From assembly GCA_965637545.1 (NCBI GenBank), contig OZ281497.1, forward strand, positions 24,056,001 to 24,120,000: a DNA stretch of 64,000 bases, written 5' to 3'. The notes beneath the pieces were generated by a model. The model was not told the origin of the DNA. It worked only from the letters and a program-made list of their open reading frames with translations, and ran no database searches. Origin of the DNA: Phallusia mammillata (Eukaryota). This document shows, one piece after another, positions 2,042 to 64,000 of the stretch; within the stretch, counting starts at the first letter, position 1, and every line of letters starts with the position of its first letter. A program made the position numbers and the translations under genes.

Positions 2042-4284
2042 CTATATCGGTATAGGGGCTGGTGGGCGGTCATATTGGCAAATTTCATCAGGATTATGTC
2101 TTGTTTCGTTGCTAGTTTTCATTGGAATTTCATACACCGATGGGCAAATTTCATTAGGATTAGGTTTTGTTTCGTTGCTAGTTTTCATTGGAATTTCATA
2201 CACCGACTCTTCAACTGCATTCGGCTTGGTCTGATTTATATCTGCGACTTTGTTTAGTTGTTTGTTGGACCTGCAAATGCAAAAAACCTGCTTGAGATAT
2301 TTTTTAAATAAAAATTGAATATTCTTTACAAAACATTGTATGAGCTGCATCTCATAAGTGCGAATTGGTGACAGGTTCTGAAAGGTCGATATGGAAACGT
2401 TGGTTAAAGAGCAACGGTGTAATTGTATATTTAATCTAAATTCTACACCAGGGCTTTATATCCAATATAGAGTATATTTAAAATAAATCAATGCATTTTG
2501 CAAGCAATTCCCCACCAAAATAAAAAATAACAAAATAGTTCGTTGTAGATTTTGGTTGAAGTTTTCTATTTTACCTTTTCCTGTCCCAGTAAAACACAAC
2601 AATCAGGAAAACAAGAACCAGAAAGAAAAATCCTGCCACGGCGCTTGGAACTGCAACTGCTACCAATCGGTATTCATTTGCTAAAACCAAGTGTTGTAAT
2701 GTTAGCTGGAATTGTTAATCATTAAGTAGATGTGCCCTATGTGGAGACCGTCTTATGCCACAGGGACTATATGCAATGTTATTGGTATTATTTTTTAGAG
2801 ACATGCAGGATTTTAAAGTAGACTATACTATAGTTTAGGCGTGCTACCAAATTCAGTCATGCTATTGTTTCAATAGAAAATTTGCCACCATAAAAAATTC
2901 CCGTGCTACCAACGTCAATCATGCTATTGTTTCAATCGAAAGTTTGCCTCTATTCAAAGATTCCAATTAAAGAATGAAGTTAACTAATAAATAGCACTCG
3001 AAGCTTGCTGTAAACAATGCACCATAAGATCAACAAACTGGAACACCATAGCCCGGCTACAAAGCCCACATGGTTAAAGTCTTGTCATTATCTGCATTTA
3101 TGAGACCGTATATTTGCTACAGCAGGTTAGCCTACATGAGTGTAACTTAATTCTTTGTTATTGTTATTGCTTTGTACTTAAATTGTTTAAATGATTACTG
3201 TTACTTACTTGCTTTGGTTGGAGTTGGATTGTTATGAGTTGAAATGGTTCCTGTTTTCATTGTTTTCGTGCCTTGCGTAAAACAAAGTCAAGCGTCAATC
3301 TTATGTAGCAGCACAAAATCAATGGGTGTAAAATAGTGATTATTTACATTTAAAACTATAACCAGTATAAATTCAGTTTGGGTCTCTAACTTCTTGACTC
3401 TTACATCTCGGGGTGTTATCAGTAAAACAATGACCTACATAAACTTAAAAAGCTTTTTTTTAATTTTGAATGCTTCTGCAAACCCCTGTTTTATTATCAC
3501 TAACTAATTAAAAAGTTTAAATTGATTATGTCATTGTTTTTGGTCATCGTTTTCCTCGCAAACTTTTAAATGGTCATTTGTAAACAGTTTTGTGTTTAAA
3601 ACTAAGGTATGCGCTCAGTGCACGAATAATTCCTGCAACCTACTTTCTTTAGCCAGGAGAGGATTGTTAGCAGTTGAAACGAATCCTGTTTCCATTATTT
3701 AGTTTGTGCCTTCTGTGGTTTCTGAAATAACAAACAATGTCGATCTTTATAGGCACACAAAAACTAAATGCTTAAAATAGTGATTATTATTCATTTTTGA
3801 AAACAATACAGTTCAGGTCGATGTTTGTGTCTGAATTTCTTGACAATTACGAGTCCAAATTTGTTCACAAGCCTTTGTACTCTAAATAATGTCCCAGATT
3901 TTACAACTTTTGAAAATATTTTTTTAAACGGTTATTTAAAACTAACAAAATCTACATTAGAAAAGCATACAAGAAACAAACATCAGATAATGTTTGTAAA
4001 ACCTTGCTTAATGTTGTTGTTTTTTCCCCAAAAACCGTTGCTATAAAATCCATTTACATCATCGATCTTTATCTGCGATAGTTTCATTGTTATTGTTGCT
4101 ATTACGTCAAGCAATATGAATGTCAAACTAAAAAAATATATTTCTTTTTACCATAATAGTCGTAATAGTTGTTGTCTCCGGGTTCATCATCAAACTCGTA
4201 ATTTCCAGATCCTACCCCAGAGTAATAAACAGCCACAGATGAGGAAATATGCAAAATTATAGCAACACAGATAGCCAACTTCAT
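2042..4284 (-). pseudogene. S1: small Tyr-rich single-pass membrane protein; nonsense codon in skippable stalk exon 2a, duplicated YEIP motif
   Basis: Exons 4152-4284 (MKLAICVAIILHISSSVAVYYSGVGSGNYEFDDEPGDNNYYDYY), 3644-3721 (TAA at 3699-3701 where S2-S5 have CAA), 3209-3271 (TKTMKTGTISTHNNPTPTKA), 2575-2680 (TM: NEYRLVAVAVPSAVAGFFFLVLVFLIVVFYWDRK), 2042-2270 (tail). All GT-AG. Exon 2a is phase 1-1, so skipping it restores the frame. Confidence 0.75.
2077..2208 (-). repeat. 66-bp in-frame tandem duplication in S1 cytoplasmic exon
   Basis: Two copies of SVYEIPMKTSNET(K/R)(P/H)NP(N/D)EIC(P/Q); ggcaaatttc at 2077 and 2143. Confidence 0.95.
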
Positions 4285-5727
4285 TTTGTGTTCAGTAGGC
4301 AATATGCAAAAACCACTTTCTGAAGAAAATTAGGTCCAAAAAAGGTTATGAAACACTAAGCAGGAGCCCAAAAACGCGCTTCAAAACTATAACTAATATA
4401 TAGTTAGTTTCCTTTAAGGTTTAATCTATCCTTTAATTAAATCAAAACCTTTAAAACGGTGTAGCTGCAGCGTGTTTAGGAATTATCCCCAATTCTGTCC
4501 TTAACTATTTTTGCACACCATAAGATTTCAACTTTGCGCAGCTGTTTCTAGGCGATGGTTAAGTGCAATTTTGTAGCTATGTGTTCTTTCACCAAGCGAA
4601 CTATAAGGCTATGAACAATATGTTTTGTTTTTCTATGCTTGACGCTTACAAAAAATGCTTATACGTTTCATAACGTTAAACTTTCCATATTAACTGTGTG
4701 AAAATTGCTCTTTCCGGCTATACTGAAAGCGACAACTTCTAACTATATCATCCATGCAACAATATTTGCCAGTTTTCATCACCCAATAAAGCTGGATTGT
4801 GCGCTAACAGTTTGCCGAAACTATTTATTGTACTTTATGATGACTCAAGTCAATTCATGTAGTTTCGAAACTTGACAGGTTAATTTTTCATTAGACACAG
4901 TGTATGACCTTTGTCTGTTTTCAAAGGAAGTCTCGACTTACTTTTGGTACAACCTACCAACCTCATAAATATTTTTAATATCACAGTAAAACTGCCAGGA
5001 AAACGGTCAATTTTGTCTACAAGTTTATTATTTATTGCAAATTTTAAAATATGTGTAAAAATTGCAAGGTCTTGTAAGTTGCACAAGAATATCACTAACT
5101 TTTAGCGTTTGTATAAAGTGACTGTGGTTTATAATTCCCGCACAACCTCTTTTGTTAATGGAAATAAAAAGACTCATTGTTAAACCATAATTTGTTTCTT
5201 TTTTACACTGCATAAAAAACGAATATAACAAAACAAAAATGAAACATTTAGCATACACAAGTAAAGCTTTAACCCCTTTTTGTTTAAATATAAAAATAAA
5301 CTTACATATAGCCTATCAATAGTTTTCAATAGAAATTTGTCGTACGCAAGCGTAGCGGTACAAAGCCTTCACCCATGCAAAGAACAAACAATTGCTTAAG
5401 GCTAAACGTTGGAAAGCGCAATTCTGTAATGGTACACAGTTTATGGATCAAAGAGGAAATACATCTATAATAATCACTGCGTTACATTAGGACCCATTAA
5501 AGTGTAAGGGCCCATAAAGCCATATAGACTGACGAATATTTCCATTAAAAACAAGCTAGGTATAACTAATAGAAGACTCCATTCTAGCTTTAATTGAAAA
5601 ATGTTGCTGCTCATTGTCATATGACTTATATTTTTTTGACAAATTTAGAGTTCACAAGGAGGCTACAAAGTTTCTTTATCAGCAGTATTTTATCTCCAAT
5701 TAGGCCCCGCGGATAAATAGATTGCAT

Positions 5728-8700
5728 TTAACATGGACCGCCGACGCTGGATGGAACTTTTGGAAGGGGAAAAGCAGGTCTGTCAAATGGACAAGTTTGT
5801 TCAGTGTCAGGTCCATTGTGGTAGCGTTTTTTCTCAAACACCGGAACTTCGTAAATTGGTTCTTCAGTTTCGGCTGGAGCTTCAGCTCTTGCGTTATTTA
5901 CAGGCCATGGGTTTCTCCTGTAACGTTCCATGTTGGCACTGCAAATTAAAAAAAAATGATTGCAACCGTGAATAAACCCTAAACCTAAAATTACATTAAT
6001 GACACTTCTTTGTGTTACATAGTTTCCTTTTGGTGACGTTTGCCATGAAATGTGAAAAGGTGGTTAGACAGAATATCAATTTTGGTTATTTTATATAAGC
6101 CTCAAAATAGTGATTTTTAACCTGTGGTAACCTTGTAAAATCAGTAACTAAGTTATATAGTTCTCAAATCCCTTTCATTATAGTTAATGATTTCGCATCT
6201 CGTCACCCCTTACATTGGTTCCTCGGCAAATTGTGGGATGGCGTGAACTTGAGGTGCTAAGTTGAAGACTGGTACCGGGTCTGTGCTATTGGGTGCTCTA
6301 TTCGCCCTGCAAATGCAATACATGTGTGAAAAGGAAATTTTTAAAGCCATACATCTCACCCAAATTGTTTGTACAAGTTGTATTAAAAATTGTGTTGGTT
6401 GCAATGCAATTTCACAAATCCTAAATGAGAGTTTCTAACTTTTGTCTATACGCTCTTAAGCCAACGATCACAACATCGACTGCAAAGGCGCGCAAAAATT
6501 CCATCATTGGTTACTGAGTTAGGGACATGAAAAGTTACAAAATGTGACAAAAAACTCCCTTTCGGCCAAAAATCACGTTTTGTAGCGGGCGATAGAGAAG
6601 TCCAATTGGGCTCTAAATGTGCACATGCGTTAAAGTTGATTATATCAGTTATCCTAATCTTGCTGTGCGTACGGTCAGCAGTTCTTATTCCTTAAACGTG
6701 CAAATGTTTGGAGCACCCGATAGCAGCAGGTACGTTTCTGGTTTAAGTAAAGTTCTTCAGAACATCTGGCCTAGTTTAACTACAACGTAATCACCCAACT
6801 GTTTTCGTTGTTGGTTACCATTCCTTTTAGCAAAGTTTGCTTTTTTACCTTCTTCTCTTCCGGCAAAGCACAACGATTACGATCACAAGAACAATGAGAA
6901 GGATTCCTCCCACGGAACATGAGATTGCAATTATCAACGTCTGGTCATCTATTAAAGTTGAAACGTTCGTTAGTGATTACAATTGATAAATTTAAGGAAA
7001 AAGGCACAATCTGAATAGAGCAGGGCAATGTCATTTCAATACCAAGGACAAGTCGCAGACACATGACACGTAAATTTGAAAACGTTTTGTATTATTAGTA
7101 TTTTTTACTGCTTACTAGTTTGAGGAGCTCTTACGGTGGTCTCTGGAACATGAGAAAATAAATGTTATTTTAGAACAGTGGTCGGCAACCGCAGATCCGC
7201 GGCCCACTGCGACGAGTTCGTTACCGGGCTGTATAATTTTTCGGGTTAAATGCTTTAAAACATTTTGCCCATATATCTCAGGATGATAAACTAATAAAAT
7301 TTTACTTTCAAAAGCGGCCGGCAGAGCAAAAAAGGTTGCCACACCTTGTTTTAGAAGAACCGCGTTTATTAATGATTTTTTTGTTTTTCCATTTTTTTTG
7401 CTAAGTTTGTCTCAAAAACGATTTTGCTACGTTTCATTGGATAGACCTTGACGTTGAAAGTGTTTTTTTGACAACTGCTTTCAAAAAATTTCAGTTTACC
7501 ACGTTTTTCAAATACAAACCAAATCTTGTTCGTTTCATTGGACTGCGTCTAAACCAGTGGTTCTTAACCGGTGGGAAATTTAATGTTTTCAGAGGGAAAT
7601 TATGTAAGTCAGGTAACCAAACTCGGGGCCCAAGGATCGAACCCGGCTTTGAATTAGTCGTTGAAAGTTACTTTCCTAAAAAATTTTCCGAAACAACATG
7701 TTAGATTAATTTTTAACCTAGTTTTACAAGACGCCTAAAAATACAAGGCCGTTTGTTACATCACATACATGTCTGATAGTATCAATGACTGTGCTATTGC
7801 GCGCGAATAAAGGCCTTTTCTTTGTTGATTGTGATGCAATAAATGACTATTGCAAGCAGAGGAAACTCTATAATATTCCATAAGCTTTATTCTCTCATAG
7901 AAGCACTATTTAAACTGAATAAGATTGTAGTATATAACTTTGGGGTTCCAGACCAAATCGCTTCACAAAATTATTTCATTTAAAGAATATTTTTTTTGTT
8001 AACGGCACAAAACATCATTATAAAAATAACAAAGGGAAAAATTCAAACTTGGTGATTGACTTTAGTGGGAAACCACACCAAAGAGGTTAAGAACCACTGG
8101 GATAGACCTTGATACTGAAAGTGTTTTTTTTTTCACAACTGTTTTTAAAAAATTTCAGTTTACCACGTGTTTCAAATACAAACCAAATATGATATTGCTC
8201 GGAGTCTAGCAAACGACTTTTTGTTTTTTAAACAAAATTGTATGAATTTTTTTTTAGTATGAATCCGTAATTACCTTTAGAGTCCGTGGTTGTCCCTGGA
8301 GTAGTAAATGTGTTTGGACGAATATTTCAAAAACATAGAGGAAAAACAATGATTGATATTCAATGATGTTTTTGCAACAACACTTATGGAATTATGTGAG
8401 ACAGTTAACACATTGAAAGCCATTTCGTAGCAAGACACAGTTTTTTTTTAAGTTTTTTTTTTAAGGTTTCGATTTTCAAATACGGTTTTGTTAATGTCAA
8501 TCTTAACCCATATGTAAAAACAAACGATATAAGCAAGAAAAGGGAAAAAATGTTATGCAAATCTGTTTTACCTTTAAGAGTTCTTTGGCAGATATATCTA
8601 GCACTTGATGGACATAACGATGCGCTTATCTCCGAATAACTAGTGGGAGATGATTTCGAAATTTTGCTGCAATAGTTATTCCCAGTTCGAACATAAAACT

Positions 8701-9629
8701 CTTTTTCTGTAAGCACAAGTTTGTGGGTTTGAACAATACGATATGCACCAAAGTTGTAACAGGTAATAAACCTGGATATCAGACAAACCCAGCCCACATC
8801 CGTTTTCTACAAAACATGAATTGCTCTCATAGCTTTAATGTAAACAAAATAATAATAATAACTCGGTTGGTTTAGAGTTGGATGAGGGTGGAACTTATGG
8901 GCCACAACTCGAAGGCACAAGTCTGAAACCCGTGTAGTTTTGCAAAACCCAAACCATATCCAATTTGGCGGACACAACCTGTTCAACCACAATCAAAAAA
9001 GTAATTGTGGCAGAGTATGAGTTCAGACCCGGTAATTGAGAAACATTAAGCCGAAAATTAAACCACAGGTTCGAATTCTGCAACTCCCAGAACATCTAAA
9101 AACCGTTTTTTAGTTGACCCACATTATTTTTCACCTCTATTTGAGGCTGGCACAAAATTTGACAAACATAATTCTTTTAATAACTATTTGTTAGCCCCCA
9201 GCAAAAATAACTTAATTTATGAGAACGAAACCGGAATTTATGAGAACAAAAAATTAGCTAAATTAGCTGAATAGGATTTGCGTTTACAAACTGGTAACAG
9301 TTTAAACTTTGAAAAATCTCATAGCTGCACAATTGCATTAATTTCACCAAACCGGAACCAGCAAATAAAGGTTACTTACTGGAAGAAAAAATAAAAAGAA
9401 ATGTTGATGGCTTTGGAAGAAACCCTTGAAGAAAGTGAAGAAGGCGAGTTGATTGTACACTCGCTATCTTTGCATTTAGCTTTGAGCATTCTTTCTCAGC
9501 TTGATTATACGAATAGACTTCGTCGGACCCAATATAATATTCGTTTCCATCAAATGAATGCCAATTTTGGGCGGAACATGAATGACAAATTCCAACCACG
9601 AAAAGCATTAGGTGTATATTGTTTGCCAT
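5728..9629 (-). CDS. L1: type-I transmembrane C-type lectin-like receptor, 271 aa, 6 exons
   Basis: Exons 9380-9629 (MANNIHLMLFVVGICHSCSA signal; WHSFDGNEYYI..YNQAEKECSKLNAKIASV), 8572-8706 (YCSKI..LCPSSARYICQR), 7116-7142 (ETTVRAPQT), 6849-6948 (TM DQTLIIAISCSVGGILLIVLVIVIVVLCRKRR), 6214-6306, 5728-5938 (EEPIYEVP..DRPAFPLPK..GGPC*). Total 816 nt, open, all GT-AG with consistent phases 1,1,1,2,2. Confidence 0.85.
7176..7348. mobile_element. hAT-type MITE (~173 bp) in L intron 2
   Basis: Imperfect TIR CAGTGGTCGGCAACC / GGTTGCCACACCTTG; 8-bp TSD TTTTAGAA. Same-site copies at 19607-19779, 31448-31620, 43467-43639 and ~63406-63585; site empty in L5 (~52515) and S0 (~35). Confidence 0.8.
7555..8099. 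mobile_element. hAT-type MITE (~545 bp) in L intron 2
   Basis: Perfect TIR CAGTGGTTCTTAACC / GGTTAAGAACCACTG; TSD degenerate. Copies at 19991-20513, 31832-32354, 43851-44373 and 63795 to window end; absent in L5. Confidence 0.8.
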
Positions 9630-10192: not shown

Positions 10193-10899
10193 CAGGGGCG
10201 GGCAACTTGTCCAGTCGGCGGGCCTGATATGGAAAAATGAAGTACTTGGCGGGCCGGATTCGTGAATCGATACATTAATCGCGTATTTCTCCAGTGATTT
10301 AAAACGGATTTTTGACCACATAAAATTATTCACCACAGCAAATTTAATGCATACACCACAGACTTAGATACTGGTGAAACACTAACTAGGCTAGTAAGGC
10401 TACACGTGTGGAAACAAAGGAAGCCGTGAAAGCAGGCCACACACAAGGTTGGCAGTTATGTCGTAACAATGGATGTATGGTGCAATGGTAACAACGGCGG
10501 GAAAGTTCTTTTGTTCTCGGGGAGCGTTACTGTTTGTTACAACCAGGTTTTTTTTTAAGGTTTGGTTTGGGTGACCGCTAAGTAGTTTTAAGAGACCGCA
10601 AGTGTTTCATTTAAATACCAAAAAATAGCCATATTTGCTTAAACGAATTATTTATTAGGCTACTGGCAAATTTTGGGAAACCGCTGGAGAAATTTGGGGG
10701 ACCGTTTCGGTCCCCCAAAACACCTTAAAAAAACACTGGTTACAACTATAATTTGACGTAGTAAGCAAGTAGTGGGGGATTCGGCAGACTGTGGCCGCGG
10801 GCCACGTTATATCATGTAAGACCAGAAACTGTCTGCGGGCCGCTCAAAATCCCGTCGCGGGCCGGATCCGGCCCGCGGGCCGTATGTTGCCCGCCCCTG
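10193..10899. mobile_element. hAT-type non-autonomous element, 707 bp, unique to the L1 upstream region
   Basis: 14-bp TIR CAGGGGCGGGCAAC / GTTGCCCGCCCCTG; perfect TSD ATCTAAAG at 10185-10192 and 10900-10907; empty site (single atctaaag) upstream of L2, L3 and L4. Confidence 0.92.
10544..10738. mobile_element. 195-bp hAT-type MITE nested in the 707-bp element
   Basis: TIR CAGGTTTTTTTTTAAGG / CCTTAAAAAAACACTG; perfect TSD GTTACAAC at 10536-10543 and 10739-10746. Confidence 0.88.
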
Positions 10900-11537
10900 A
10901 TCTAAAGTAACGGTATCTCAGAATAAGCCCTTCAAGTGCAATACAAAAAACAACAACCTTGCAATCAAGTCCAAATCTTGTTTCAAATATAATTATTTTA
11001 TGTACATAAGATTTCAATAATTCTGTAAGCAAATGCTAAACTAATTCTTTATTTAATACTCTTTCTGTGTTGCTAAGATGAGAAAAAATCTAAAATAAAG
11101 TCTAATTGCTTGGTCTCTACTTTACACACAATAAACACTTACTTGCTCATTTTCGACGCTAAAACAATAAACGGATATAACGTGTACATGGCGTAAATCA
11201 TTTTATAGCGAAACTTTCTTGTTCCTGCTTTACCGAAAGCAATACCACAATAGGTGTGAACTTTTGTTGTTGCCAGTTAATATTGACCTGACATGAGGTT
11301 AATACACTAAATATATGTCGGACATGCGTCTTGCATTTTGTATGACTGGTAATTCTCTATTCAAAAGCTTAGGAAACGTGACAGGTAATTTTTTTATCAG
11401 TCACTCAGTATCAATTGCTTCTGAAGAGAATCTTATCTATTATTGCAAAGCATGGCATTTCAGCCAGTAAGTTTATAATAACCTGAAGTTCCCTACCTTG
11501 TCTATTAGCCTGTTTATGCCCATTATATTGTTGCCCA

Positions 11538-11927
11538 CTGCACTGATATGACTGTACAGGTCGAAACACTGTGTCAAGTTTTCTGGTTCGCTGTGTGATC
11601 TATTTCACACAATGGCATCGAACCTCCACTACACTATCCTTATCAAAATCGGTGTATAGTTGCTTAACGACATCTTGTAAATCTGTGACAATCTTTGGTA
11701 GATTTTCCCTGGCAGCCATATTTAGATGATGCCACTCATCAGAAGTTTACTTACAAACCCTCAGTGCTCATTAGAGAAGTAATTATCTGGTGGACAGCTA
11801 ATACAGGATTACATACCAACTGCACTTTATACATAGCTTCAATAGCTCACAACACCAAACAGCAAATGCCTTGTCGCCAGATGCACTAATAAGACCGTTT
11901 CGGTCGAAGTAGTGGTCACTGCCTGCA
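11538..11927 (+). ncRNA. Two degenerate type-I hammerhead ribozyme motifs ~345 bp apart (Penelope-like/retrozyme remnant)
   Basis: ctgca-CTGATATG-ACTGTACAGGT-CGAAAC-ACTGTGTC at 11538-11575 and tgca-CTAATAA-GACCG-TTT-CGGTC-GAAG-TAGTGGTCACTG-CC-TGCA at 11882-11927. Stems retained, cores mutated. Paralogous copies upstream of L2, L3, L4; best preserved upstream of L5 at 56134-56180. Confidence 0.6.
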
Positions 11928-13326
11928 ACCAACCTATTATTCTACTGAGGCGTTGCTTTTATTCTACGTTAATTGTTTCCATATATTAGACCTGCAACAC
12001 GACGTATACGTAAAGTTTAAAAATTTTAACACTGTTTTAGAAACCAATTCACTTATCTATTGTGTTTTTGTGTTTTAGATAAGTTTTGAAACTTTCAATT
12101 ATGTTCTCAAATATGTTCAATCAAAATACCTAATCTGTTAAATTTTTGAATTAAGTTTTCTGGTATGCGATCAATTAGTATTGGATCAGTAAAACGGAGA
12201 TTATGGTCATCAGTGTCGAAAGTACAATATTATCGATGAGTTTTCCAGTTCCACAACGTAAGCTCATTTTCTTGGCGTAATGTGCTGCCACCTAACGACA
12301 AACACAATAAATCTTTACGTGGTATCAATGAGTATAAAACTCAAATTCTCTTTTATAAAAAAATCTCTTTTATAAAAACCTGTGGGTATTTGTAACCATG
12401 AGCGATGACTTTCAGATGATTTAATACTGCGTTAAACAATTTTACAATGCGTGAGCCAAAGAACTTTTTTATAAAGAATACACCATGCAGACCCGTCAAT
12501 AATCACTGTAGCAGGTTGTCCATCGAGCTATAGAACACGGTATATAAAGCACTTAAACGGTCAAAAAACGGTGAATGCCAGGTGTGTTAAGTGATGTCAC
12601 ACGGAATTGGCCAGTAGAAATGTTGCGTTGACAAAAGATAAAACCGGAGATGTTTGTCAGGTGTACGACAGATGAATATTAATGATTATCATTAAAACTT
12701 AAGGGGAAACTGCTTAAGTTTGGAGTGAATAAACAGATTTTGCATTTTGTAGTTGTATTCTAAGTCCTAAGAAACAGTGACACAACCGGGTAAGATATGT
12801 ATCAAATGTATGTTAAAGGTCAGCAAACGCTTGTGTACGGCAATGCGACAAGGTGAAGTAATATTGTTTGTTTCATTTTTATCTTCGCTTGAATGTGTTA
12901 TGCTCACAGTAAAACCGCCCCGCATCTGGCTGCCTGTTTTATTGCAAGTCCGTTCAATAACATGTTAATTGATTTTTTTACTAAGGCAGTTGGTGACGTC
13001 AATTTAGTTTGGAACCACTGGGTACATGGCGGTTCCGCTTATCACTCGGCCAACTTGGCAATGTAATTATTACATATATCTATGTGTATCATATGAGACA
13101 TGGTGAGGCAATTTAATCACCATAGTTACTTACCGCATCATTAAGATTGACATCACCTTCGAACCAGAAAACCATCGCAGGTTCTCCGACTGGTACAATC
13201 TTCAAATCATCTGGATAAAGTTGCTCACATGTATGACTGAGGCGAAAACCTCATTAAACAAACATTTGTATCTGTAATTTGTAAAACAGATATAAGTTAC
13301 TGTTTTAGTTGTTAACATGCATGAAT

Positions 13327-13560
13327 GGGATGACACAGCGGTTAGTGTAGGGTGCTTGCGACCATGAGGTTCACGAATTAAATCCCGTCATAACTGCTGT
13401 GTCAAACATAAAAAATGTTGTTCATCTTTCAAGAAAATAAACTTTAGGTTAAGACTGTGGCTGAAACAGACAGAAACCTAGAAATATAAACTGAGCCACA
13501 GCAAAGTCTGAACCAAAAGATTGCGGACACGTGTTAAGAAGCACACCACCGCCACTGGTC
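13327..13560 (+). mobile_element. Probable tRNA-derived SINE
   Basis: Degenerate A-box (GACACAGCGG) and B-box (GAATTAAATCCC) at tRNA-like spacing followed by a body conserved in each unit (~25215, ~37060; 3' part at ~48595). Confidence 0.45.
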
Positions 13561-13570
13561 GGCAGACAAT

Positions 13571-13620
13571 TGAGATTCGAACCCACGACTGAAAAGGCTC
13601 AGTCGTGGGTTCGAATCTCA
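13571..13620. repeat. Perfect 22-bp inverted repeat (6-nt loop) formed from a SINE B-box
   Basis: TGAGATTCGAACCCACGACTGA-aaaggc-TCAGTCGTGGGTTCGAATCTCA; copies at 25457-25506 and 37302-37351. Confidence 0.95.
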
Positions 13621-14109
13621 CCGCAGGCTAGATTTTTCTACTCTACTCCTCGCCGCAAGGGAATGCTTGGCAGATAGGCTTGTATAGGTACGACCCCATC
13701 AATAGGCCTGACGTAGTTTGAATGCTAGGCTTTACAAATTGACTTAATTTTTAAACTAGTATATTGTATACTATACAATATACAATTTATAGTATACCCA
13801 ATTGTGTTTGCATGTGTAATCATCCTTGCAATTGTTAAACCAAGCTTCACAGGCATCAAGTGACAATGGAACGTTACGATACCGTTCAGTTCTGTACGAA
13901 TTCGGTTTCTAGATGAAATCCACTCAGTGTCAGAATAATTTATTGTTTCTCAACTTTGTTAGGTTTCAAACTGGTTTTAGCTTTTGTTAATAATTTGTGG
14001 ATTCGATAAAAGTATGAGTTAAATTGAACATTATTCAGTTGAAATCTACTTTTGTTTGGTGCTTCAAGAAATTTGGTTTCAATGTTTTATTCATTATTAT
14101 TGTTATGAT

Positions 14110-51848: not shown

Positions 51849-54800
51849 TTAACATGGACCGCCGACGCTGGATGGAACTTTTGGAAGGGGAAAAGCAGGT
51901 CGGTCAAATGGACAAGTATGTTCAGTATCAGGTACATTGTGGTAGGGCTTTTTCTCAAACACCGGAACTTCGTAAATCGGTTCTTCAGTTTCGGCTGGAG
52001 CTGCAGCTCTTACGTTGTTCACAGGCGATGGGTTTCTCCTATAACGTTCCGTGTTGGTACTTCAAATTAAAAAAATGATGATTGTAATTGTGAATAAACC
52101 CTAAACATAAAACTACATTAGTCGGTTTTCGTTGCTGTCGGTTTTCAGCCAACTGTTTTCGTTGTTGGTTACACTCCCTTTTAGCAAAGATTGCTTTTTA
52201 CCTTCTTCTCTTTCGCCAAAGCAATACAATTACGATCACAAGAACAATAAGATGGAATCCTCCCAACGAACATAAGATTGCAATTGGCAACGTCTGGTCA
52301 TCTAGTAAAGTTGAAACGTTAGTGTTAATTGATAAATTTAAGCATAAAGGCACGATCTGTATAGAGCAGTACAATGTCATGTCAATACCAATGACAAGCC
52401 GCAGAAACATAACATGTAAATTTAAAACCTTTCTGCATTTTTTAATACTTTTTCACTACGTACTGGTTTGATTAGCTCTTGCAGTGGTCTCTTGAACATA
52501 AGATAAATATACGCTATTTTGGCAGAACCACTTTTTGCAATAACTTTTCTGGTTTTCCAATTATTTTGCTAAATTCGTTTTAAAAAAGTTTGTGCTATGT
52601 TTCATTGATTTGACCTGGGTGTTAAAAGTGTTTTCACAACTTTTTTTAATTAGTTTACAACGTTTTTTTTTCAAATCCAAACCTATGATATTGCTCGGAA
52701 TATAGAAAACTTGTTTTTTTACACAATAGTATAAAATGTTTCTCTAATATGAATCCGTCATTACCTTTAGAGCCATTGGTTGTCGACCCTGGAGTAGTAA
52801 ATGTATATAATCGAATACCTTAAAAACATAGAGGAAGACCCTATAAGTTATTTTTTGTTTTTTAAACAAAATTTTACAAAATGTTTTTCTAATATGAATC
52901 CGTAATTACCTTTAGAGCCCTTGGTTGTCGACTCTGGAATAGTAAATGTATATAATCGAATACCTTAAAAACATAGAGGAAAAACACTATAAGTTATTTT
53001 TTGTTTTTTTACACAATTGTATAAAATGTTTCTCTAATATGAATCCGTAATTACCTTTAGACCCCTTGGTTGTCGACTCTGGAATAGTAAATGTATTTAA
53101 ACGAAAACCTGAAAAACATAGAGGAAAAATACTACATTTTTTGTTTTTCAAACAAAATTGTAAGAAATGTTTTGATTTTTTGAAACATAATTCCGTACTT
53201 ACGTCTGGAGGTTGTGGTTGTTTCTGGAGTAATAAATGTGTTTGGAACAATATCTTTAAAAAATTAAAGAGAAAAAAAAACACTTTATCCAGTGATTTTT
53301 TTGCTTTTTTATTGTTTTGCGACAAGACTTTGAAACGTTGACGCATGGAATTAAATGAGACAGTTAATACATCTAAAGCGGTTTCATAGCAAGACATGCG
53401 TTTTTTTATATATAAACAAAGGTGAAAATCAAAAAAAAGTTTGAGCAAATCGGTTTTACCTTTAGGGATTCTTTGGCAGATATATCTAGCAGTTGATGAA
53501 CAAGTGGCTTCTTCCCAATGCCAACTGCAACTAAACCAGGAACTCGTTATCTTGCTGCAATAGTAACCCTCAGTATGAACAAAATACCCTGGAAGCACAA
53601 AGTATGTAGATTGCAACAATCCGCAATATGCAACATATTTCTAACGGGTAATAAATCTGAGAATCAGCTAAACCCCAAAATACAGATCCAAAACACAATT
53701 GTTTTCCACAAAAAACGAATTTGGCCTTAAAGCTAAAGCTAACAAAATAAAACCATTGCGAAATGGGCACACAGTTGTAGTTTTACTTATCTCAAATTAG
53801 GTGTGATAGTCTAATATTCCGAATGAAGCAATTGGGAGGAAAGTCCTACACGAAGTTCACAAGTTGTACACAAAAATCATACCACCTGTGCGTATGCATA
53901 TTTATCCAACAGAAAATAAAAACGTAAGTGTGGTAAAGTGGGAATTTAGGAAATTTAGGGAACCTAGGCCTCTACTTTTAAAAATGTCGAAATATGGCCT
54001 GGAACGGGGGTCGGCAACGTTTTTTGCACTGCGAACCGTTTTTGAAAGTAAAATTTTATCGGGGATCGGTCTTCTCCGGTATACATGCTGAAATCGTTTC
54101 TTAGCATTTAACCGGAAAAATGATACGGCCCGGTAACGAACTCCTGGCGGCCCGTTACCGGGCCACGGACCGCGGTCGGTTGCCGACCACTGGCCTGAAA
54201 AACTCAAGTCCGACTTCTACAACTTCCTCCAGTATATTTAAAAACGATTTTAAATTTACAACCTTATCGAACTTTGCACATTATTTTCAAAGCAGAATTA
54301 GCTGACTGGGTTTTACCATTATACCAGCTGTCGATAGTTTCAACTATTTTGCGCTAGATTATTCATTGGGTTACAAATCACATTAGGCCGCTCTGGCTAA
54401 AACAGTGGTTCTCAATTTTTTTCCGGATCGCGTACCATCTGACAACATATTAGGAATCACAGAGATCTACTCGCGTACCACCTGAAAAGTTCAGGCGTAC
54501 CACTAATGGAACGCATACCACAGTTTGAGAACCATTGGACTAAAAGAATATTTCACACTCCAAAGACGTCAAACGATTTTCAGTAAATCCGCGATCGCTT
54601 TACGAAATAATATTTTCAGATCCAATTTTCACTTGTTTATTTCACGCTTTCACTACGCATGTGATGGGTAAACGCTAAACTAGTCTAGAGTAGTTCGCCA
54701 AGTCCGTTACCAAAAAGCTTTTTTCACAGAAAACAAAAGTAAGCTGCAGAACTGCACGCTATAATACTATTCGATAACTTACCATAATACCATTCCGACC

Positions 54801-55029
54801 AAGTACAGTCTGAAAGAATGCTGTTGAGAAATGCAAGAAGGCGAGATGAAGGTTTCACATTCGCTAGTCTCGCATTTAGCTTTGAGCATGCTTTCTCAGC
54901 TTGACCATACGAACTGACTTTGTAGGATCCAATATAATACTCGTTTCCATTAAAAGAATGCCAAGTTCGGGCGGAACATGAATGCGAAATTGCAAACACG
55001 AAAAGCATTAGGTGTATATTGTTTGCCAT
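51849..55029 (-). CDS. L5: divergent C-type lectin-like receptor, 237 aa, 5 exons (exon 5 absent)
   Basis: Exons 54783-55029, 53460-53588, 52464-52490, 52202-52301, 51849-52059; 714 nt, open; TM DQTLPIAILCSLGGFHLIVLVIVIVLLWRKRR; tail EEPIYEVP. Two acceptors are AAG rather than YAG. Confidence 0.8.
52700..53260. repeat. 145-bp tandem repeat in L5 intron 2 (three copies plus a degenerate fourth)
   Basis: aatatgaatccgt at 52746, 52891 and 53036; single copy in L1-L4 (~8255). Confidence 0.9.
54005..54192. mobile_element. hAT-type MITE in L5 intron 1 (related to the 7176-7348 family, opposite orientation)
   Basis: TIR CGGGGGTCGGCAACG / GGTTGCCGACCACTG; TSD GCCTGGAA/GCCTGAAA. Confidence 0.75.
54403..54537. 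mobile_element. 135-bp hAT-type MITE in L5 intron 1
   Basis: TIR CAGTGGTTCTCAA / TTGAGAACCATTG; TSD GGCTAAAA/GACTAAAA. Confidence 0.8.
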
Positions 55030-58437: not shown

Positions 58438-60534
58438 CTATATTGGTATTGGGGCTGGTGGACGGTCATATTGGCAACTTTCATTAGGATTAGGTCTTGT
58501 TTCGTGGCTAATTTTCATTGGAATTTCATACACTGACTCTTTAACTGCATCCGGCTTGTTCTGATTTATATCTGCGACTTTGTTTGGTTGTTTGTTGGAC
58601 CTGCAAATGCAAAAAACCTGCTTGAGATTTAAAAAAAAATGAATATTCTTTGCAAAATATTATATGAGCTGCATCTCTTAGCTGCCAATTGGTATCAGGT
58701 TTTGAAAAGTCGATATGGAAACGTTGGTTAAACAGCAACGGTGCAATTGTCTATTTAATGCAAAACTCTAGGCCAGGGCTGTATATTCGAAATAAATCAA
58801 TACATTTTGCAGGCAATTCCCCACCAAAAAGAAAAAAGAAAAAAAAAATAGTTTGTTGTAGATTTTTGTTGAAGTTTGCTAGTTTACCTTTTCCTGTCCC
58901 AGTAAAACACGGCAATAAGGACAACAAGAACCAGAAAGAAAAATCCTGCCACGGCGCTTGGAACTGCAACTGCTACCAATCGGTATTCATTTGCTAAAAC
59001 CAAGTGTTGTAATGTTAGCTAGGAATTGTTCATCATTAAGTAAATGTGCCCTATGTGGAGACCGTCTGATGCTACAGGGACTATACGCAATGTTATTGCT
59101 ATTATTTTTTAGAAACATGCAGGATTTTAAAGTAGACTGTACTATAGTTCATAGGCGTGCTACCAAATTCAGTCATGCTATTGTTTCAATAGAAAATTTG
59201 CCTCCATAAAAAATTCGCGTGCTACCAACGTCAATCATGATATTGTTTCAATCGAAAATTTGCCTCTATTCAAAGATTCGGATTAAAGAATGAAGTTGGC
59301 TAATAAATAGCACTCGAAGCTTGCTGTAAACAATGCACCATAAGATCAACAAACTGGAACACCATAGCCCGGCTACAAAGCCCACTTGGTTAAAGTCTTG
59401 TCAATATCTGCATTTATGAAACCGTATATATGCTACAGCAGGTTAGCCTACATGAGTGTAGCTTAATTCTTTGTTATTGTTATTGCTTTGTACTCAACTT
59501 GTTTAATTGATTACTGTTACTTACTTGCTTTGGTGGGAGTTGGATTGCTAGGAGCAGAAATGATTCCTGTTTTCTTTGTTATCGTGCCTTGCGTAAAACA
59601 AAGTCAAGCGTTAATCTCAAGTAGCAACATAAAATCAGTGCGTGTAGAATAGTGATTATTTACATTTAAAAATATCCAGTATAAATTCAGTTTGGGACTC
59701 TAACATTTTGACTCTTACATCTCAGGGTGTTGTCAGTAAAACAATGACCAACTAAACGCAAAAAGCCACTTTTTTAATTTTGAATCCTTCTGCAAACGCC
59801 TGATTTTGTCATTGTGTTTGGTCATTGGTTTTCTCCAAAACTTTTAAATGGTCATTTATAAAACCAAGTTTAAAATTAAGGTATGTGCTCATTGTACGAA
59901 TAATTTCTGCAACCTACTTTCTTTAGCCTTGTTAAAAGTTGAAACGGATTCTGTTTTCATTATTTGATTTGTGCCTTCTGTGGTTCCTGAAACAACAAAC
60001 TAAATTACAGGCACACAAAAAGTGAGTGCTTAAAATAGTGATTATTCATTTTTCATAAAAAGGTCCAGTTAAGGCCGATATTTGGGTCACAATTTCTTGA
60101 CAATTACTACCTAAATTTGTATACAAGCCCTATTGGTGAACAATATCCCACATTAAAAAAACGTTTAAAAGTCTTTTTTAAAACGGTTTGTATTTAAAAC
60201 TAACAAAATCTACATTCGAAAAATATACACGAAGCAAACATTGAATATTTTTGCAAAACCTTGTTTAAATTTTTTGGTATAAGAAAAACCATTGCTTTAA
60301 AATCCATGCACATTATCATTTAATTGTGGTAGTTTCATTGTTATTATTGCTATTACGTCAAGCAACATGATTGTCAAACCACATAAAATATTTCTGTTTA
60401 CCAGAATAGTCGTAATAGTTGTTGTCTCCAGGTTCATCATCCAACCCGTAATTTCCAAATCCTACCCCAGAGTAATAAACAGCCACAGATGTGGAAATAT
60501 GCAAAATTAAAACAACACAAATAGCCAACTTCAT
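58438..60534 (-). CDS. S5: small Tyr-rich single-pass membrane protein, 177 aa, 5 exons (two stalk exons)
   Basis: Exons 60402-60534 (..VYYSGVGFGNYGLDDEPGDNNYYDYS), 59918-59986, 59525-59587, 58888-58993 (TM), 58438-58600 (..KESVYEIPM..CQYDRPPAPIPI*); 534 nt, open. Confidence 0.82.
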
Positions 60535-61868: not shown

Positions 61869-64000
61869 TTAACATGCTCCGCCGACGCTGGACAGAACTG
61901 TTGGAAGGGGAAAAGCAGGTCGGTCAGATGGACAAGTTTGTTCAGTATCAGGTCCATTGTGGTAGCGTTTTTTCTCAAACACCGGAACTTCGTAAATTGG
62001 TTCTCCAGTTTCGGATGGAACTTCAGCTCTTGCGTTGTTTACTGGCCATGGGTTTCTCCTGTAACGTTCCCTGTTGGCACTGCAAAGTAAAAAAATAACT
62101 GTAACCTTGAATGAACCCTAAACTTAAAAGTGCATGAACTACATTTGTTTGCATTACACAGGCAGGAGCTTGGCCGAACGGTCTGGCGCGCCTGACCCAT
62201 ACACAGACATAAACAACCCTGATCGGGATTCGTCCCCGGGAGAGTCCTGGGTTCGAACCCCGTAAAAAAATGAAAAAAGGTGGTTAAACGTAATATCGGA
62301 TTTGGTTATTCAATATATTCTACAAATCATTGTTTTTGACCCTTTGGCAACCTTTTTAAATAAGTCACTGGTTCTCATATCCTGGTTTTTAGCATATTTA
62401 ATTATGCTAACGCTAATCATTTTAGCATCCCAGCACCCCTTACATTGGTTCCTCGGCAAATTGTGGGATGGAGTGAACTTGAGGTGTTAAGTTGAAGACT
62501 GGTACCGGGTCTGTGCTATTGGGTGCTCTATTCGCCCTGCAAATACAAAACATGTGTGAAATAGAAATTTGTAAAGCCATACATCTCACCCAAATTGTTT
62601 GTACAAGTTGTATTAAAAATTGTGTTGGTTGCAATGCAATTTCACAAATCCTAAATGAGAGTTTCTAACTTTTGTCTTTACGCTCTTAAGCCAACGATGA
62701 CAATGTCGACTGCAAAGGCGCGCAAAATTTCCATCATTGGTTACTGAGTTAGGGACATGAAAAGTTACAAAATGTGACAAAAAACTCCCTTTCGGCCGAA
62801 AATCACGTTTTGTAGCGGGCTATAGAGAAGTCCAATTGGCCTCTAAATGTGCACATGCGTTAAAGTTGATTATATCAGTTATCCTAATCTTGCTGTGCGT
62901 ACGGTCAGCAGTTCTTATTCCTTAAACGTGCAAATTTTTGGAGCACCAGATAGCAGCAGGTGCATTTCTGGTTTAAGCAAAGTTCTTCAGAACATCTGGC
63001 CTAGTTTAACTACAACGTAATCACCCAACTGTTTTCGTTGTTGGTTACCATTCCTTTTAGCAAAGTTTGCTTTTTTACTTTCTTCTCTTCCGGCAAAGCA
63101 CAACGATTACGATCACAAGAACAATGAGAAGGATTTCTCCCACGGAACATGAGATTGCAATTATCAACGTCTGGTCATCTATTAAAGTTGAAACGTTCGT
63201 TAGTGATTACAATTGATAAATTTAAGGAAAAAGGCACAATCTGAATAGAACAGGGCAATGTCATTTCAATACCAAGGACAAGTCGCAGACACATGACACG
63301 TAAATTTGAAAAAGTTTTGTATTATTAGTATTTTTTACTGCTTACTAGTTTGAGGAGCCTTTACAGTGGTCTCTGGAACATAAGAAAATAAATGTTATTT
63401 TAGAGCAGGCAACCGCAGTCGGCAACCGCAGATCCGCGGCCCACTGCGACGAGTTCGTTACCATGCTGTATAATTTTTCGGGTTAAATGCTTTAAAACAT
63501 TTTGCCCATATATCACAGGATAATAAACTAATAAAATTTCACTTTCAAAAGCGGTCCGCAGAGCAAAAAAGGTTGCCACACCTTGTTTTAGAAAAACCGC
63601 GTTTATTGATGATTTTTCTGTTTTTCCATTTTTTTGCTAAGTTTGTCTCAAAAACGATTTTGCTACGTTTCATTGGATAGACGTTGATGTTGAAAGTGTT
63701 TTTTGACAACTGCTTTCAAAAAATTTCAGTTTACCACGTTTTTAAAATACAAACCAAATATAATATTGCTCGTTTCATTGGACTGCGTCTAATCCAGTGG
63801 TTCTTAACCGGTGGGAAATTTAATGTTTTCAGAGGGAAATTATGTAAGTCAGGTAACCAAACTTTTGGCCCAAGGGTCGAACCCGGCTTTGAATTAGTCG
63901 TTGAAAGTTACTTTCCTAAAATTTTTCCGCAACAACATGTTAGATTAATTTTTAACCTAGTTTTACAAGACGCCTAAAAATACAAGGCCGTTTGTTACAT
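61869..64000 (-). CDS. L6: partial C-type lectin-like receptor (exons 3-6; exons 1-2 beyond right edge)
   Basis: Exons 63346-63372, 63079-63178 (TM ..SVGEILLIVLVIV..), 62444-62536, 61869-62079 (GEPIYEVP..GGAC*); open. Confidence 0.8.
62161..62270 (+). mobile_element. Short tRNA-derived retroposon in L6 intron 5
   Basis: Near-identical to 50650-50763; replaces ~8 bp (tatgtcat) present at this site in L2-L4; no TSD. Confidence 0.85.

What the first reader, a model, noticed from the sequence alone, without database searches (positions are those of the whole stretch)
2042..64000. Cryptic two-gene receptor cassette: a lectin-like receptor and a small Tyr-rich membrane protein with homologous phosphotyrosine tails, amplified as a pair
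Seen: splicing the fragments by hand gives two alternating type-I membrane genes (minus-strand order L6-S5-L5-gap-L4-S4-L3-S3-L2-S2-L1-S1-S0). Their ectodomains are unrelated but their tails align: L EEPIYEVPVFEKKRYHNGPDTEQTCPFDRPAFPLPK vs S EESVYEIPMKTSHETRSNPEEICQYDRPPAPIPRK. Both TM exons end in phase 2 after basic residues, and the following exon begins at the same gcatttgcag|G acceptor. Established: acidic-x-(I/V)-Y is a Src/Abl-type substrate, pYxxP is bound by Crk/Nck/Abl-type SH2 domains, and PxxP is an SH3 ligand. The motif fits neither ITIM nor ITAM. Inference: a co-duplicating, copy-number-variable receptor/co-receptor (or receptor/ligand) pair typical of immune or self/non-self recognition loci, conceptually like the linked NKRP1-Clr genes. 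I do not recognise either protein as a named gene.
Basis: partly seen in the sequence, partly recalled or inferred. Interest (0 to 1): 0.9.

Follow-up and report, generated by a model that had tools for sequence, protein, structure and literature searches.

The report
Lectin-like and small membrane gene pairs
A probable sea-squirt genome carries a repeated pair of unannotated membrane-protein genes, one with a shortened lectin-type outer domain and one with a short acidic tyrosine-rich one, that share an inherited membrane-anchor-plus-tail cassette; the layout is real, but no RNA, partner or function has been shown.

Summary
On the minus strand, six L genes (one cut by the window end) alternate with five S genes. 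Every exon has GT-AG splice sites.

L1, L2 and L5 are intact (278, 277 and 268 aa). S2, S3 and S4 are identical (160 aa), and S5 is intact (177 aa). L3 has a frameshift, L4 has lost a splice donor, and S1 has a stop codon.

L has a signal peptide and a C-type-lectin-like domain. The N-terminal half matches solved CTLDs (profile E 3.6e-6). The WIGL strand, long loop and calcium/sugar-binding motifs are missing.

The L and S tails are homologous (alignment score 79-80 against 27±5 for shuffles). The membrane-anchor exons also match at DNA level, into the downstream intron. So the two genes share an inherited cassette and differ in their outer parts.

Only the first tyrosine motif (E-x-[IV]-Y-E-[IV]-P) is common to both.

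No RNA contigs covered any exon in three likely embryonic runs. A tail profile found no relative among 1.84 billion proteins. Signalling through phosphotyrosine, and any receptor-ligand pairing, remain inference.

The scan has already noted other lectin-type receptor clusters with tyrosine tails in this genome.

The parts
10898..46453 (.). Three tandem ~11.9-kb units (10898-22784, 22784-34626, 34626-46453). Each holds one L and one S gene.
   Evidence: Self-blast gives 99.3-99.7% identity between units. Unit-specific indels show that the copies are distinct.
5728..9629 (-). L1, an intact 7-exon gene of 278 aa: signal peptide, compact CTLD, two Thr-rich stalk mini-exons, TM exon and two tail exons.
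   Evidence: Spliced ORF with GT-AG at every junction.
18151..22224 (-). L2, intact, 277 aa. Exons: 22224-21978, 21301-21167, 20710-20690, 19573-19547, 19380-19281 (TM), 18732-18640 (tail exon 1) and 18361-18151 (tail exon 2).
   Evidence: Gene model. Exon 1 matches Pfam Lectin_C at 21.7 bits and solved CTLDs in the PDB.
30026..34066 (-). L3. A 34-nt deletion in the TM exon (junction near 31193) causes a frameshift and a stop after ...NDQTLIIAIS. The product would be a truncated, possibly secreted form, or the copy is a pseudogene.
42018..45895 (-). L4. A 7-nt deletion removes the GT donor of tail exon 1 (near 42505). The frame would survive only if that 93-nt phase 2-2 exon is skipped.
51849..55029 (-). 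L5, intact, 268 aa. It has a divergent CTLD with an extra Cys pair, five stalk mini-exons and no tail exon 1.
   Evidence: CTLD dN/dS against L1 and L2 is 0.94 and 1.10; tail dN/dS is 0.28 and 0.48.
61869..64000 (-). L6, the 3' part only (one stalk exon, the TM exon and both tail exons). It is open as far as the window reaches.
2042..4284 (-). S1. Signal and acidic exon, then two mucin-like exons (the first has a TAA at 3699-3701), a TM exon, and a tail exon with an internal 22-aa duplication that gives two YEIP motifs.
15254..16803 (-). S2, intact, 160 aa. Exons: 16803-16677, 16379-16302, 15850-15745 (TM) and 15425-15254 (tail).
27139..28678 (-). S3, intact, with a protein identical to S2.
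38984..40533 (-). S4, intact, with a protein identical to S2.
58438..60534 (-). S5, intact, 177 aa, five exons. It has two mucin-like exons where S2-S4 have one fused exon.
18265..18288 (-). The shared tyrosine motif in L2 (EEPIYEVP). The S2 counterpart EESVYEIP lies at 15344-15367.
   Evidence: E, Y, E and P are invariant in the alignment of 7 tails.
18181..18210 (-). The shared C-terminal motif [FY]-D-R-P-x-x-P-x-P-[KR] in L2 (FDRPAFPLPK). The S2 counterpart begins with YDRP at 15284-15295.
   Evidence: D, R, P, P and P are invariant.
33209..33243 (-). A 35-nt exon-like remnant in L intron 1 that reads ..GLGLSDIQ (like the WIGL strand of a CTLD). Including it breaks the reading frame. Both its splice sites are lost in L5.
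49289..49630 (+). A transposon fragment in the stretch between L5 and L4 where an S gene is missing.
   Evidence: Pfam DUF7041, E 9.7e-24.

Best explanation
This is a lineage-specific, birth-and-death tandem array of two paralogous type-I membrane-protein genes. The animal is probably an ascidian.

Both genes end in the same inherited cassette:
- a TM exon (phase 1 in, phase 2 out, ending in basic residues);
- a tail exon carrying an acidic E-x-[IV]-Y-E-[IV]-P site;
- a C-terminal C-x-[FY]-D-R-P-x-x-P-x-P-[KR] proline-rich site.

Different phase 1-1 ectodomain exons sit in front of the cassette.
- L has a signal peptide and a shortened C-type-lectin-like domain. It keeps the four core cysteines but lacks the WIGL strand, the long loop and the Ca/sugar-binding motifs. 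It would therefore bind protein or another non-calcium ligand, if it binds anything. A short Thr-rich stalk of variable length follows.
- S has a signal peptide, about 25 residues rich in Tyr, Asp and Glu, and a Ser/Thr-rich segment.

Shown here: the gene structures, the homology of the cassette, the CTLD nature of the N-terminal half of L, and co-duplication of L and S as a unit.

Inferred: clustering of either ectodomain leads to phosphorylation of the Y-E-[IV]-P tyrosine by Src- or Abl-type kinases. This recruits a Crk/Nck/Abl-type SH2 adaptor, and the proline-rich end serves as an SH3-type ligand. On this reading L and S are two inputs into one pathway, probably in adult blood or epithelial cells, rather than a demonstrated receptor-ligand pair.
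For: Gene models: all junctions are GT-AG with consistent phases. ORFs are intact in L1, L2, L5, S2-S5 and the visible part of L6.

ORF retention: L5's CTLD exons differ from L1's at about 20% of bases yet stay open. In simulation, random substitution at 20-30% of sites leaves no stop in only 0.7-2% of trials. The four core cysteines are kept in all copies.

CTLD:
- Pfam Lectin_C E 3.5e-4 on exon 1.
- phmmer against the PDB gives 58 hits, nearly all CTLDs.
- The divergent L5 exon 1 also hits only CTLDs.
- A profile of four exon-1 peptides gives CLEC4F at 3.6e-6, and all 11 hits at E<=0.01 are CTLDs.
- L5's last CTLD exon aligns weakly with the langerin C-terminus, W-x-[DE]-A-x-C...[FY]-I-C-[KQ]-R.

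Cassette homology:
- Protein alignment score 79-80 against 27 +/- 5.4 for shuffles, 0 of 5000 reaching it.
- tblastn E 2e-7 to 3e-4.
- TM-exon DNA score 34 against 8.6 +/- 1.3. The alignment runs through the donor into the intron.
- The acceptor context TTTTGCATTTGCAGG is identical in both genes.

The motif cores are invariant between L and S although the tails are only 23-25% identical overall. S1 duplicated exactly the YEIP-containing segment.

dN/dS is 0.28 for L1/L2 overall and for the L1/L5 tail.

CRK/CRKL SH2 domains bind pYxxP, and Src and Abl family kinases target YxxP. Type-I 'scaffolding receptors' (DCBLD1/2) work this way (PMC6029619).
Against: There is no transcript evidence. Three probable RNA contig sets of the same species label cover only intronic dispersed repeats and no L or S exon. 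No RNA run holds the stretch.

No relative of the tail was found among 1.84 billion representative proteins. None was found for exon 1 in the length range searched, and none in metagenome contigs. Conservation outside this array is therefore untested.

Constraint is weak in places:
- CTLD dN/dS is about 1 between L5 and L1/L2.
- S2/S5 dN/dS is 0.65.
- Variable sites in the L tail exon show no third-position excess (7/15/15).

Three of eleven copies are damaged.

The C-terminal half of the lectin-like domain is not detected significantly by sequence. I could not fold the spliced domain.

Phosphorylation and adaptor binding rest on motif resemblance only.
Confidence: 0.6

Rival explanations
1. 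L and S form a genetically linked receptor-ligand (or receptor/co-receptor) pair. The lectin-like L ectodomain binds the acidic, tyrosine-rich (possibly sulfated) and O-glycosylated S ectodomain, in cis or in trans. The two are kept together and co-amplified because they co-evolve, as in NKR-P1/Clr, selectin/PSGL-1 or CLEC-2/podoplanin.
For: Strict alternation and co-duplication of L and S. The S N-terminus is Tyr/Asp/Glu-rich and is followed by Thr/Ser. The L domain lacks the Ca/sugar site, as do the protein-binding CTLDs of NK-type receptors. The L5 ectodomain evolves fast, with dN/dS about 1.
Against: There is no interaction data of any kind. One 12-kb duplication unit is enough to explain the co-duplication. 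The shared TM and tail cassette shows that L and S are paralogs, which needs no binding between them. S2-S4 are identical while L2-L4 differ by lesions, and L5 has no S partner. Selectin-type binding needs the Ca site that L lacks.
Confidence: 0.12
2. The array is a decaying or silent cluster. The ORFs are recent duplicates of a once-functional gene pair that have not yet had time to break, and nothing here is expressed or functional today.
For: No RNA coverage of any exon. Lesions in L3, L4 and S1. Near-neutral evolution in parts. No homologues in the databases searched.
Against: Old copies are still open. L5 against L1 has dS about 0.3-0.4, which gives an estimated 1-2% chance of staying open under random substitution. 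Every splice site is kept in the intact copies. The core cysteines and the tail motif cores are invariant across the deep L/S split. The RNA sets sampled are small and probably embryonic, where blood-cell or adult genes would be absent.
Confidence: 0.2
3. The three near-identical units are an assembly artefact, with alleles or reads stacked in tandem. On this reading the true locus holds fewer copies.
For: The units are 99.3-99.7% identical. From my own knowledge, not tested here, that is closer than typical allelic divergence in ascidians.
Against: Three copies cannot be two alleles. Each unit has private indels: the 34-nt deletion in L3, the 7-nt deletion in L4, and a 136-bp palindromic insertion in unit 4 only. 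The older copies L1/S1, L5 and L6/S5 are clearly separate loci. Contigs from an independent DNA run cover the whole stretch.
Confidence: 0.08

Closest known systems
Type-I single-CTLD membrane receptors of vertebrates (CD302, layilin, chondrolectin)
   Same: The architecture is the same: signal peptide, one C-type-lectin-like domain, short stalk, one TM helix, and a short cytoplasmic tail with tyrosine or adaptor motifs. This comparison rests on my own knowledge of those proteins and was not tested here.
   Different: L's domain is about 105 residues and lacks the WIGL strand and the long loop. No orthology was detected. The tail is unrelated by sequence search.
Ascidian CD94/NKR-P1-like receptors (BsCD94-1, CiCD94-1)
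   Same: They are CTLD receptors of sea-squirt blood cells, and the CTLD is thought not to bind sugar (PMC5465252).
   Different: Those are type II proteins and single genes. L is type I, sits in a tandem array, is paired with S, and has not been shown to be expressed.
DCBLD1/DCBLD2 YxxP scaffolding receptors
   Same: They are type-I membrane proteins whose tails carry YxxP sites. Src and Abl kinases phosphorylate these sites, which then recruit the CRK/CRKL SH2 domain (PMC6029619). This is the mechanism proposed for the L/S tail.
   Different: DCBLD tails have seven or eight YxxP sites and a CUB-LCCL-discoidin ectodomain. L and S have one conserved Y-E-[IV]-P site (two in S1). There is no sequence homology, and nothing here has been tested biochemically.
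NKR-P1/Clr linked receptor-ligand genes of the rodent NK complex
   Same: Two gene types are interspersed in one cluster and duplicate together.
   Different: Both NKR-P1 and Clr are type II CTLD proteins that bind each other. Here only L is lectin-like, both genes are type I, they share a tail by descent, and binding is unknown.
Selectin/PSGL-1 and CLEC-2/podoplanin pairs
   Same: A lectin-type domain on one side, and a small acidic mucin-like type-I protein on the other that is tyrosine-rich or O-glycosylated.
   Different: Those partners are unlinked and unrelated in their tails. Selectins need the Ca site that L lacks. The resemblance of S is in composition only.

Membership tests
C-type lectin-like domain (CTLD, Pfam PF00059) | N-terminal half: the W-x-x-F...Y-Y-F/I-S beta strand, helix 1 with the first core Cys, and the L/I-A-S-I/V-x-S motif | tested here: met
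   A profile of four exon-1 peptides against the PDB gives CLEC4F at E 3.6e-6, and all 11 hits at E<=0.01 are CTLDs. Single sequences give 58 and 9 hits, almost all CTLDs.
C-type lectin-like domain (CTLD, Pfam PF00059) | Pfam Lectin_C match above the curated cut-off | tested here: inconclusive
   Exon 1 alone scores 21.7 bits against a cut-off of 22.6, covering profile positions 3-37 of 107. The last exon has no hit. The spliced domain could not be submitted because it has no reference.
C-type lectin-like domain (CTLD, Pfam PF00059) | WIGL strand and long loop region between helix 2 and strand 3 | tested here: not met
   In the spliced product only about 13 residues separate the end of exon 1 from the N-Y-C of strand 3. 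A WIGL-like remnant (GLGLSDIQ) survives only as a frame-breaking 35-nt pseudo-exon in intron 1. The domain would be a compact or truncated CTLD.
C-type lectin-like domain (CTLD, Pfam PF00059) | Four core cysteines in the order C1 (helix 1), C2 (strand 3), C3, C4 (F/Y-I-C) | tested here: met
   Present in L1-L5 at conserved positions despite about 50% amino-acid divergence of L5. Disulfide pairing is not testable here.
Calcium-dependent C-type lectins proper | EPN or QPD motif, and a WND motif with its calcium ligands | tested here: not met
   Neither motif occurs in any spliced L ectodomain. L5 has only W-E-E at the WND position.
ITIM / ITSM / ITAM / hemITAM immunoreceptor tails | [ILVS]-x-Y-x-x-[LVI]; T-x-Y-x-x-[VI]; two Y-x-x-[LI] motifs 6-12 residues apart; D-E-D-G-Y-x-x-L | tested here: not met
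   Inspection of all L and S tails. The conserved tyrosine has Pro at position +3. No second Y-x-x-[LI] is present.
YxxP docking sites for Crk/Nck/Abl-type SH2 domains | Cytoplasmic Y-x-x-P, preceded by acidic residues and an aliphatic residue at -1, and conserved among paralogs | tested here: met
   E-E-[PS]-[IV]-Y-E-[IV]-P is conserved in all L and S tails (E, Y, E and P invariant; L6 and S5 change only the first Glu) and is duplicated in S1. The motif definition is taken from PMC6029619.
YxxP docking sites for Crk/Nck/Abl-type SH2 domains | Tyrosine phosphorylation and phosphorylation-dependent SH2 binding | not testable with these tools
   This needs biochemistry.
Linked receptor-ligand gene pairs (NKR-P1/Clr type) | The two gene types are interspersed and duplicate together | tested here: met
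Linked receptor-ligand gene pairs (NKR-P1/Clr type) | The two products bind each other | not testable with these tools
   No data. The shared tail cassette explains the linkage without any binding.

The most novel reading that the evidence does not exclude
L and S are a co-evolving, genetically linked recognition pair of sea squirts. A calcium-independent compact lectin-like receptor binds a sulfotyrosine/mucin-type partner. Both are wired to the same Crk/Abl-type docking cassette and are used by blood cells or gametes for self/non-self or cell-cell recognition. Copy number and ectodomain sequence would vary between individuals.
Probability: 0.1. Interest if true: 0.75.

Novelty: new variant of a known kind. 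Interest (0 to 1): 0.4.

Why it matters
Sea squirts are the closest invertebrate relatives of vertebrates, and they lack the vertebrate NK-receptor and MHC systems. How they build recognition receptors is still open.

This locus is a clear example of receptor families being assembled by exon shuffling. One TM-plus-tail signalling cassette, traceable at DNA level into an intron, sits behind two unrelated ectodomains, and the pair has then been amplified and partly degraded.

The tail cassette found no relative at E<=0.001 among 1.84 billion representative proteins, and its conserved Y-E-x-P and proline-rich cores give direct hypotheses to test. If the genes are expressed in adult blood cells, they would add a type-I, calcium-independent, truncated CTLD receptor class to tunicate immunity.

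The value is limited for now by the lack of any expression or orthology evidence. Similar lectin-plus-tyrosine-tail clusters have also been noted elsewhere in this genome by this scan.

Tried and rejected
1. A three-exon CTLD that includes the 35-nt 'WIGL-like' exon (33243-33209). Rejected: it breaks the frame, and both its splice sites are mutated in L5. Exon 1 joins the last CTLD exon directly in phase 1 in every copy.

2. RNA support. Two run searches found no RNA holder. Laying three probable RNA contig sets on 28100-34099 gave coverage only on intronic high-copy repeats. This does not prove silence.

3. A profile of seven tails against 1.84 billion representative proteins. The single hit (E 4e-5) is a 1096-aa bacterial-type tandem-repeat protein and is spurious.

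4. A word-indexed homologue search with L exon 1. No candidate was found, but only proteins of 45-143 aa could be seen.

5. A metagenome contig scan with the tail alignment found nothing.

6. Pfam on the tails, the S exon 1 and both CTLD exons of L5 found nothing. The last CTLD exon against the PDB gave only chance-level hits (thaumatin, antibodies) and a weak langerin C-terminal match.

7. Homology of the L stalk exon with the S mucin exon, and of the two signal-peptide exons, is not significant.

8. tblastn with L/S exon peptides found no further L- or S-like exon elsewhere in the window.

9. Rfam over the whole window at gathering thresholds found nothing.

10. Not done: structure prediction, Pfam and full-length homologue searches with the spliced L and S proteins. 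A spliced sequence has no reference, and I did not type long sequences.

11. The species name (Phallusia mammillata) comes from other agents' notes. I did not verify it.

Full report
**What the window is.** The window is AT-rich eukaryotic DNA (33-43% GC) with no N runs. Notes from other agents of this scan call the genome a sea squirt, Phallusia mammillata. I did not verify this. It is consistent with the compact genes and with DNA runs of about 200 Mb of contigs.

**Repeat structure.** A self-comparison shows an ~11.9-kb unit present three times at 99.3-99.7% identity (10898-22784, 22784-34626, 34626-46453). Older copies flank it:
- 2140-10192, 86-96% identical to the other copies;
- 51400-55250, about 80-89%;
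- 56600-64000, 82-95%.

**L gene models.** All genes lie on the minus strand. I rebuilt them from the sequence and transferred each exon to every copy by alignment. L has seven exons in L1 to L4:
- Exon 1: 247-250 nt, ATG plus signal peptide plus the N-terminal half of the lectin-like domain, ending in phase 1.
- A 135-nt phase 1-1 exon with the C-terminal half of the domain.
- Two Thr-rich stalk mini-exons of 21 and 27 nt, both phase 1-1.
- A 100-nt TM exon, phase 1 in and phase 2 out, ending RKRRR.
- A 93-nt tail exon 1, phase 2-2.
- A 211-nt tail exon 2 with the stop codon.

Every junction is GT-AG. A 35-nt exon-like piece in intron 1 reads GLGLSDIQ, like the WIGL strand of a CTLD, but it cannot be part of the mRNA. 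It breaks the frame, and both its splice sites are lost in L5.

**S gene models.** S has four exons in S2 to S4: signal peptide plus an acidic Tyr-rich segment, a Thr/Ser-rich exon, the TM exon, and the tail exon. S1 and S5 have five exons, with two mucin-like exons.

**State of the copies.**
- L1 (278 aa), L2 (277 aa) and L5 (268 aa) are intact.
- L5 lacks tail exon 1 and has five stalk mini-exons.
- L6 is open as far as the window goes.
- L3 has a 34-nt deletion inside the TM exon that shifts the frame.
- L4 has a 7-nt deletion that removes the donor of tail exon 1. The frame would survive only by skipping that symmetric exon.
- S2, S3 and S4 encode identical 160-aa proteins, and S5 encodes 177 aa.
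- S1 has a TAA in its second exon, and an internal duplication in the tail that doubles the YEIP segment.
- Between L5 and L4 there is no S gene. A transposon fragment (DUF7041, E 9.7e-24) lies there instead.

**Is L lectin-like?** Exon 1 of L2 matches Pfam Lectin_C at E 3.5e-4 and 21.7 bits, just under the 22.6-bit cut-off. The match covers profile positions 3-37 of 107. The PDB searches gave:
- Exon 1 of L2: 58 hits up to E 10, almost all CTLDs (CLEC4F at 5.7e-4, then DCIR, LOX-1, mannose receptor, DC-SIGN, NKG2A, CD69 and others).
- Exon 1 of the divergent L5: only CTLDs.
- A profile of four exon-1 peptides: CLEC4F at 3.6e-6. All 11 hits at E<=0.01 are CTLDs, and the LOX-1 alignments reach the end of the exon.

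The C-terminal exon is not detected significantly. L5's aligns weakly with the langerin C-terminus at the expected place, W-x-[DE]-A-x-C…[FY]-I-C-[KQ]-R.

The spliced domain keeps the four core cysteines in all copies. Only about 13 residues stand where a canonical CTLD has the WIGL strand and the long loop, and there is no EPN/QPD or WND motif. I read it as a truncated, compact CTLD that cannot be a calcium-dependent sugar binder.

I could not fold it. The spliced sequence has no reference, and I did not type long sequences.

- Seven tails align over their full length with invariant N2, E26, Y29, E30, P32, K36, D52, R53, P54, P57 and P59.
- Smith-Waterman scores for L1 against S2 and S5 are 79-80, against 27 +/- 5.4 for composition-preserving shuffles. 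None of 5000 shuffles reached the observed score.
- tblastn of the S tail finds the L tails at E 2e-7 to 3e-4.
- At DNA level the TM exons of L2 and S2 align over 98 nt (score 34 against 8.6 +/- 1.3). The alignment runs through the donor into the first 14 or so intron bases.
- The acceptor context TTTTGCATTTGCAG|G is identical in L tail exon 1 and in the S tail exon.

This is common descent of a TM-plus-tail cassette, not convergence. The signal-peptide exons and the stalk or mucin exons show no significant similarity.

Tail exon 1 of L starts like a tail exon (acceptor plus A-N-x-x-P-N), is absent from L5 and is crippled in L4. It looks like a partial internal duplicate.

Only the first tyrosine site is shared. 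At the second site, S has Y-D-R-P, L1-L5 have F-D-R-P and L6 has S-D-R-P.

**Selection.**
- L1 against L2: dN/dS 0.28 overall. Exons are 4.3% divergent and introns 5.9%. Exons have one in-frame codon indel against 263 gap columns in the introns.
- L1 and L2 against L5: in the lectin-like domain dN is about 0.40-0.41 and dS about 0.37-0.43, giving ratios of 0.94 and 1.10. For the tail the ratios are 0.28 and 0.48.
- The L5 domain is still open. Random substitution at 20-30% of sites leaves no stop in only 0.7-2% of simulations.
- Constraint is otherwise modest. S2/S5 dN/dS is 0.65, and the L tail exon shows no third-position excess.

The strongest sign of function is that the two motif cores survived the old L/S split while the rest of the tail drifted to 23-25% identity.

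**Expression and relatives.** No RNA run holds the stretch. Contigs of three probable RNA runs of the same species label, laid on 28100-34099, cover only intronic dispersed repeats. They leave every L and S exon at zero, while a DNA run from another study covers all bins. These RNA sets are small and probably embryonic, so this is absence of evidence.

The other searches also came back empty:
- The tail profile found no true relative among 1.84 billion representative proteins.
- L exon 1 found no candidate in the word-indexed search, but only proteins of 45-143 aa were visible to it.
- Metagenome contigs gave nothing.

The genes appear unannotated and have no relative in any database I could search.

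**Mechanism.**
- Shown: two type-I membrane genes share an inherited TM/tail cassette behind unrelated phase 1-1 ectodomain exons, and they are amplified as a unit.
- Inferred: the conserved E-x-[IV]-Y-E-[IV]-P site is a Src- or Abl-type substrate and a pYxxP docking site for Crk/Nck/Abl-type SH2 domains. PMC6029619 establishes this logic for CRK/CRKL and the DCBLD scaffolding receptors. The D-R-P-x-x-P-x-P-[KR] end would be an SH3-type ligand.

The tail fits none of ITIM, ITSM, ITAM or hemITAM. I favour 'two ectodomains feeding one adaptor pathway' (confidence 0.6) over a receptor-ligand pair (0.12), a silent decaying cluster (0.2) or an assembly artefact (0.08).

**Comparison with known systems.** In architecture, L resembles the type-I single-CTLD receptors CD302 and layilin. 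In phylogenetic context, it resembles the ascidian CD94-like CTLD receptors, but those are type II (PMC5465252).

The NKR-P1/Clr analogy holds only for linkage. The scan has already noted several other lectin-type receptor clusters with tyrosine-motif tails in this genome. This one differs in having a non-lectin partner gene that shares the tail.

**Verdict.** The locus is real, well structured and previously unannotated, and it illustrates cassette shuffling well. Its function and its immune or recognition role remain hypotheses. Interest 0.4; new variant of a known kind.

Noticed in passing
window 41085-41220: A 136-bp palindromic insertion is present only in unit 4. Rfam finds nothing at gathering thresholds over the whole window. 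On a local scan Hammerhead_3 scores only 33 bits (gathering score 48.5), equally on both strands, alongside many generic hairpin (miRNA) models. It is a long palindrome, not a secure ribozyme call.
   Followed up: partly
window 30700-31100, 31500-32900 (and the same places in the other units): L introns hold very high-copy dispersed repeats. Summed contig depth in a DNA run is about 7,700-211,000, against about 30-80 for unique sequence. These repeats are the only parts of the stretch seen in the probable RNA contig sets.
   Followed up: no
window 48000-51400: A GC-richer block (41-43% GC) lies between L5 and L4. It holds a DUF7041 ORF on the plus strand (49289-49630, E 9.7e-24), probably a retrotransposon gag-like fragment. 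It sits where an S gene would be expected.
   Followed up: partly
window 52765-53223: L5's stalk is built from four tandemly duplicated mini-exons of 21-24 nt, each with its flanking intron (period about 145 bp). Each encodes x-S/T-T-T-x-G-S-K. Stalk length therefore varies between copies through exon duplication.
   Followed up: partly
window 22225-22250, 16804-16845 (and equivalents in all copies): Conserved acceptor-like sequences lie 22 nt upstream of every L ATG (ttttacag) and 36 nt upstream of every S ATG (ttttcttcag). L5 and S5 have them too. They may be 5'UTR-intron acceptors or spliced-leader trans-splice acceptors.
   Followed up: no
window 400-1150: A further S-like gene ('S0') at the window edge has a different first exon and a different tyrosine-containing tail piece (..ESVSIYNNEPP..). 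It lies outside this finding's coordinates and I did not analyse it.
   Followed up: no
window 33247-33432: A frame in L intron 1 reads ..CPPNWIWFGFCKTT.., which is reminiscent of the start of a CTLD (C-P-x-x-W-x-x-F-x-x-x-C). It could be a second fossil exon or chance.
   Followed up: no
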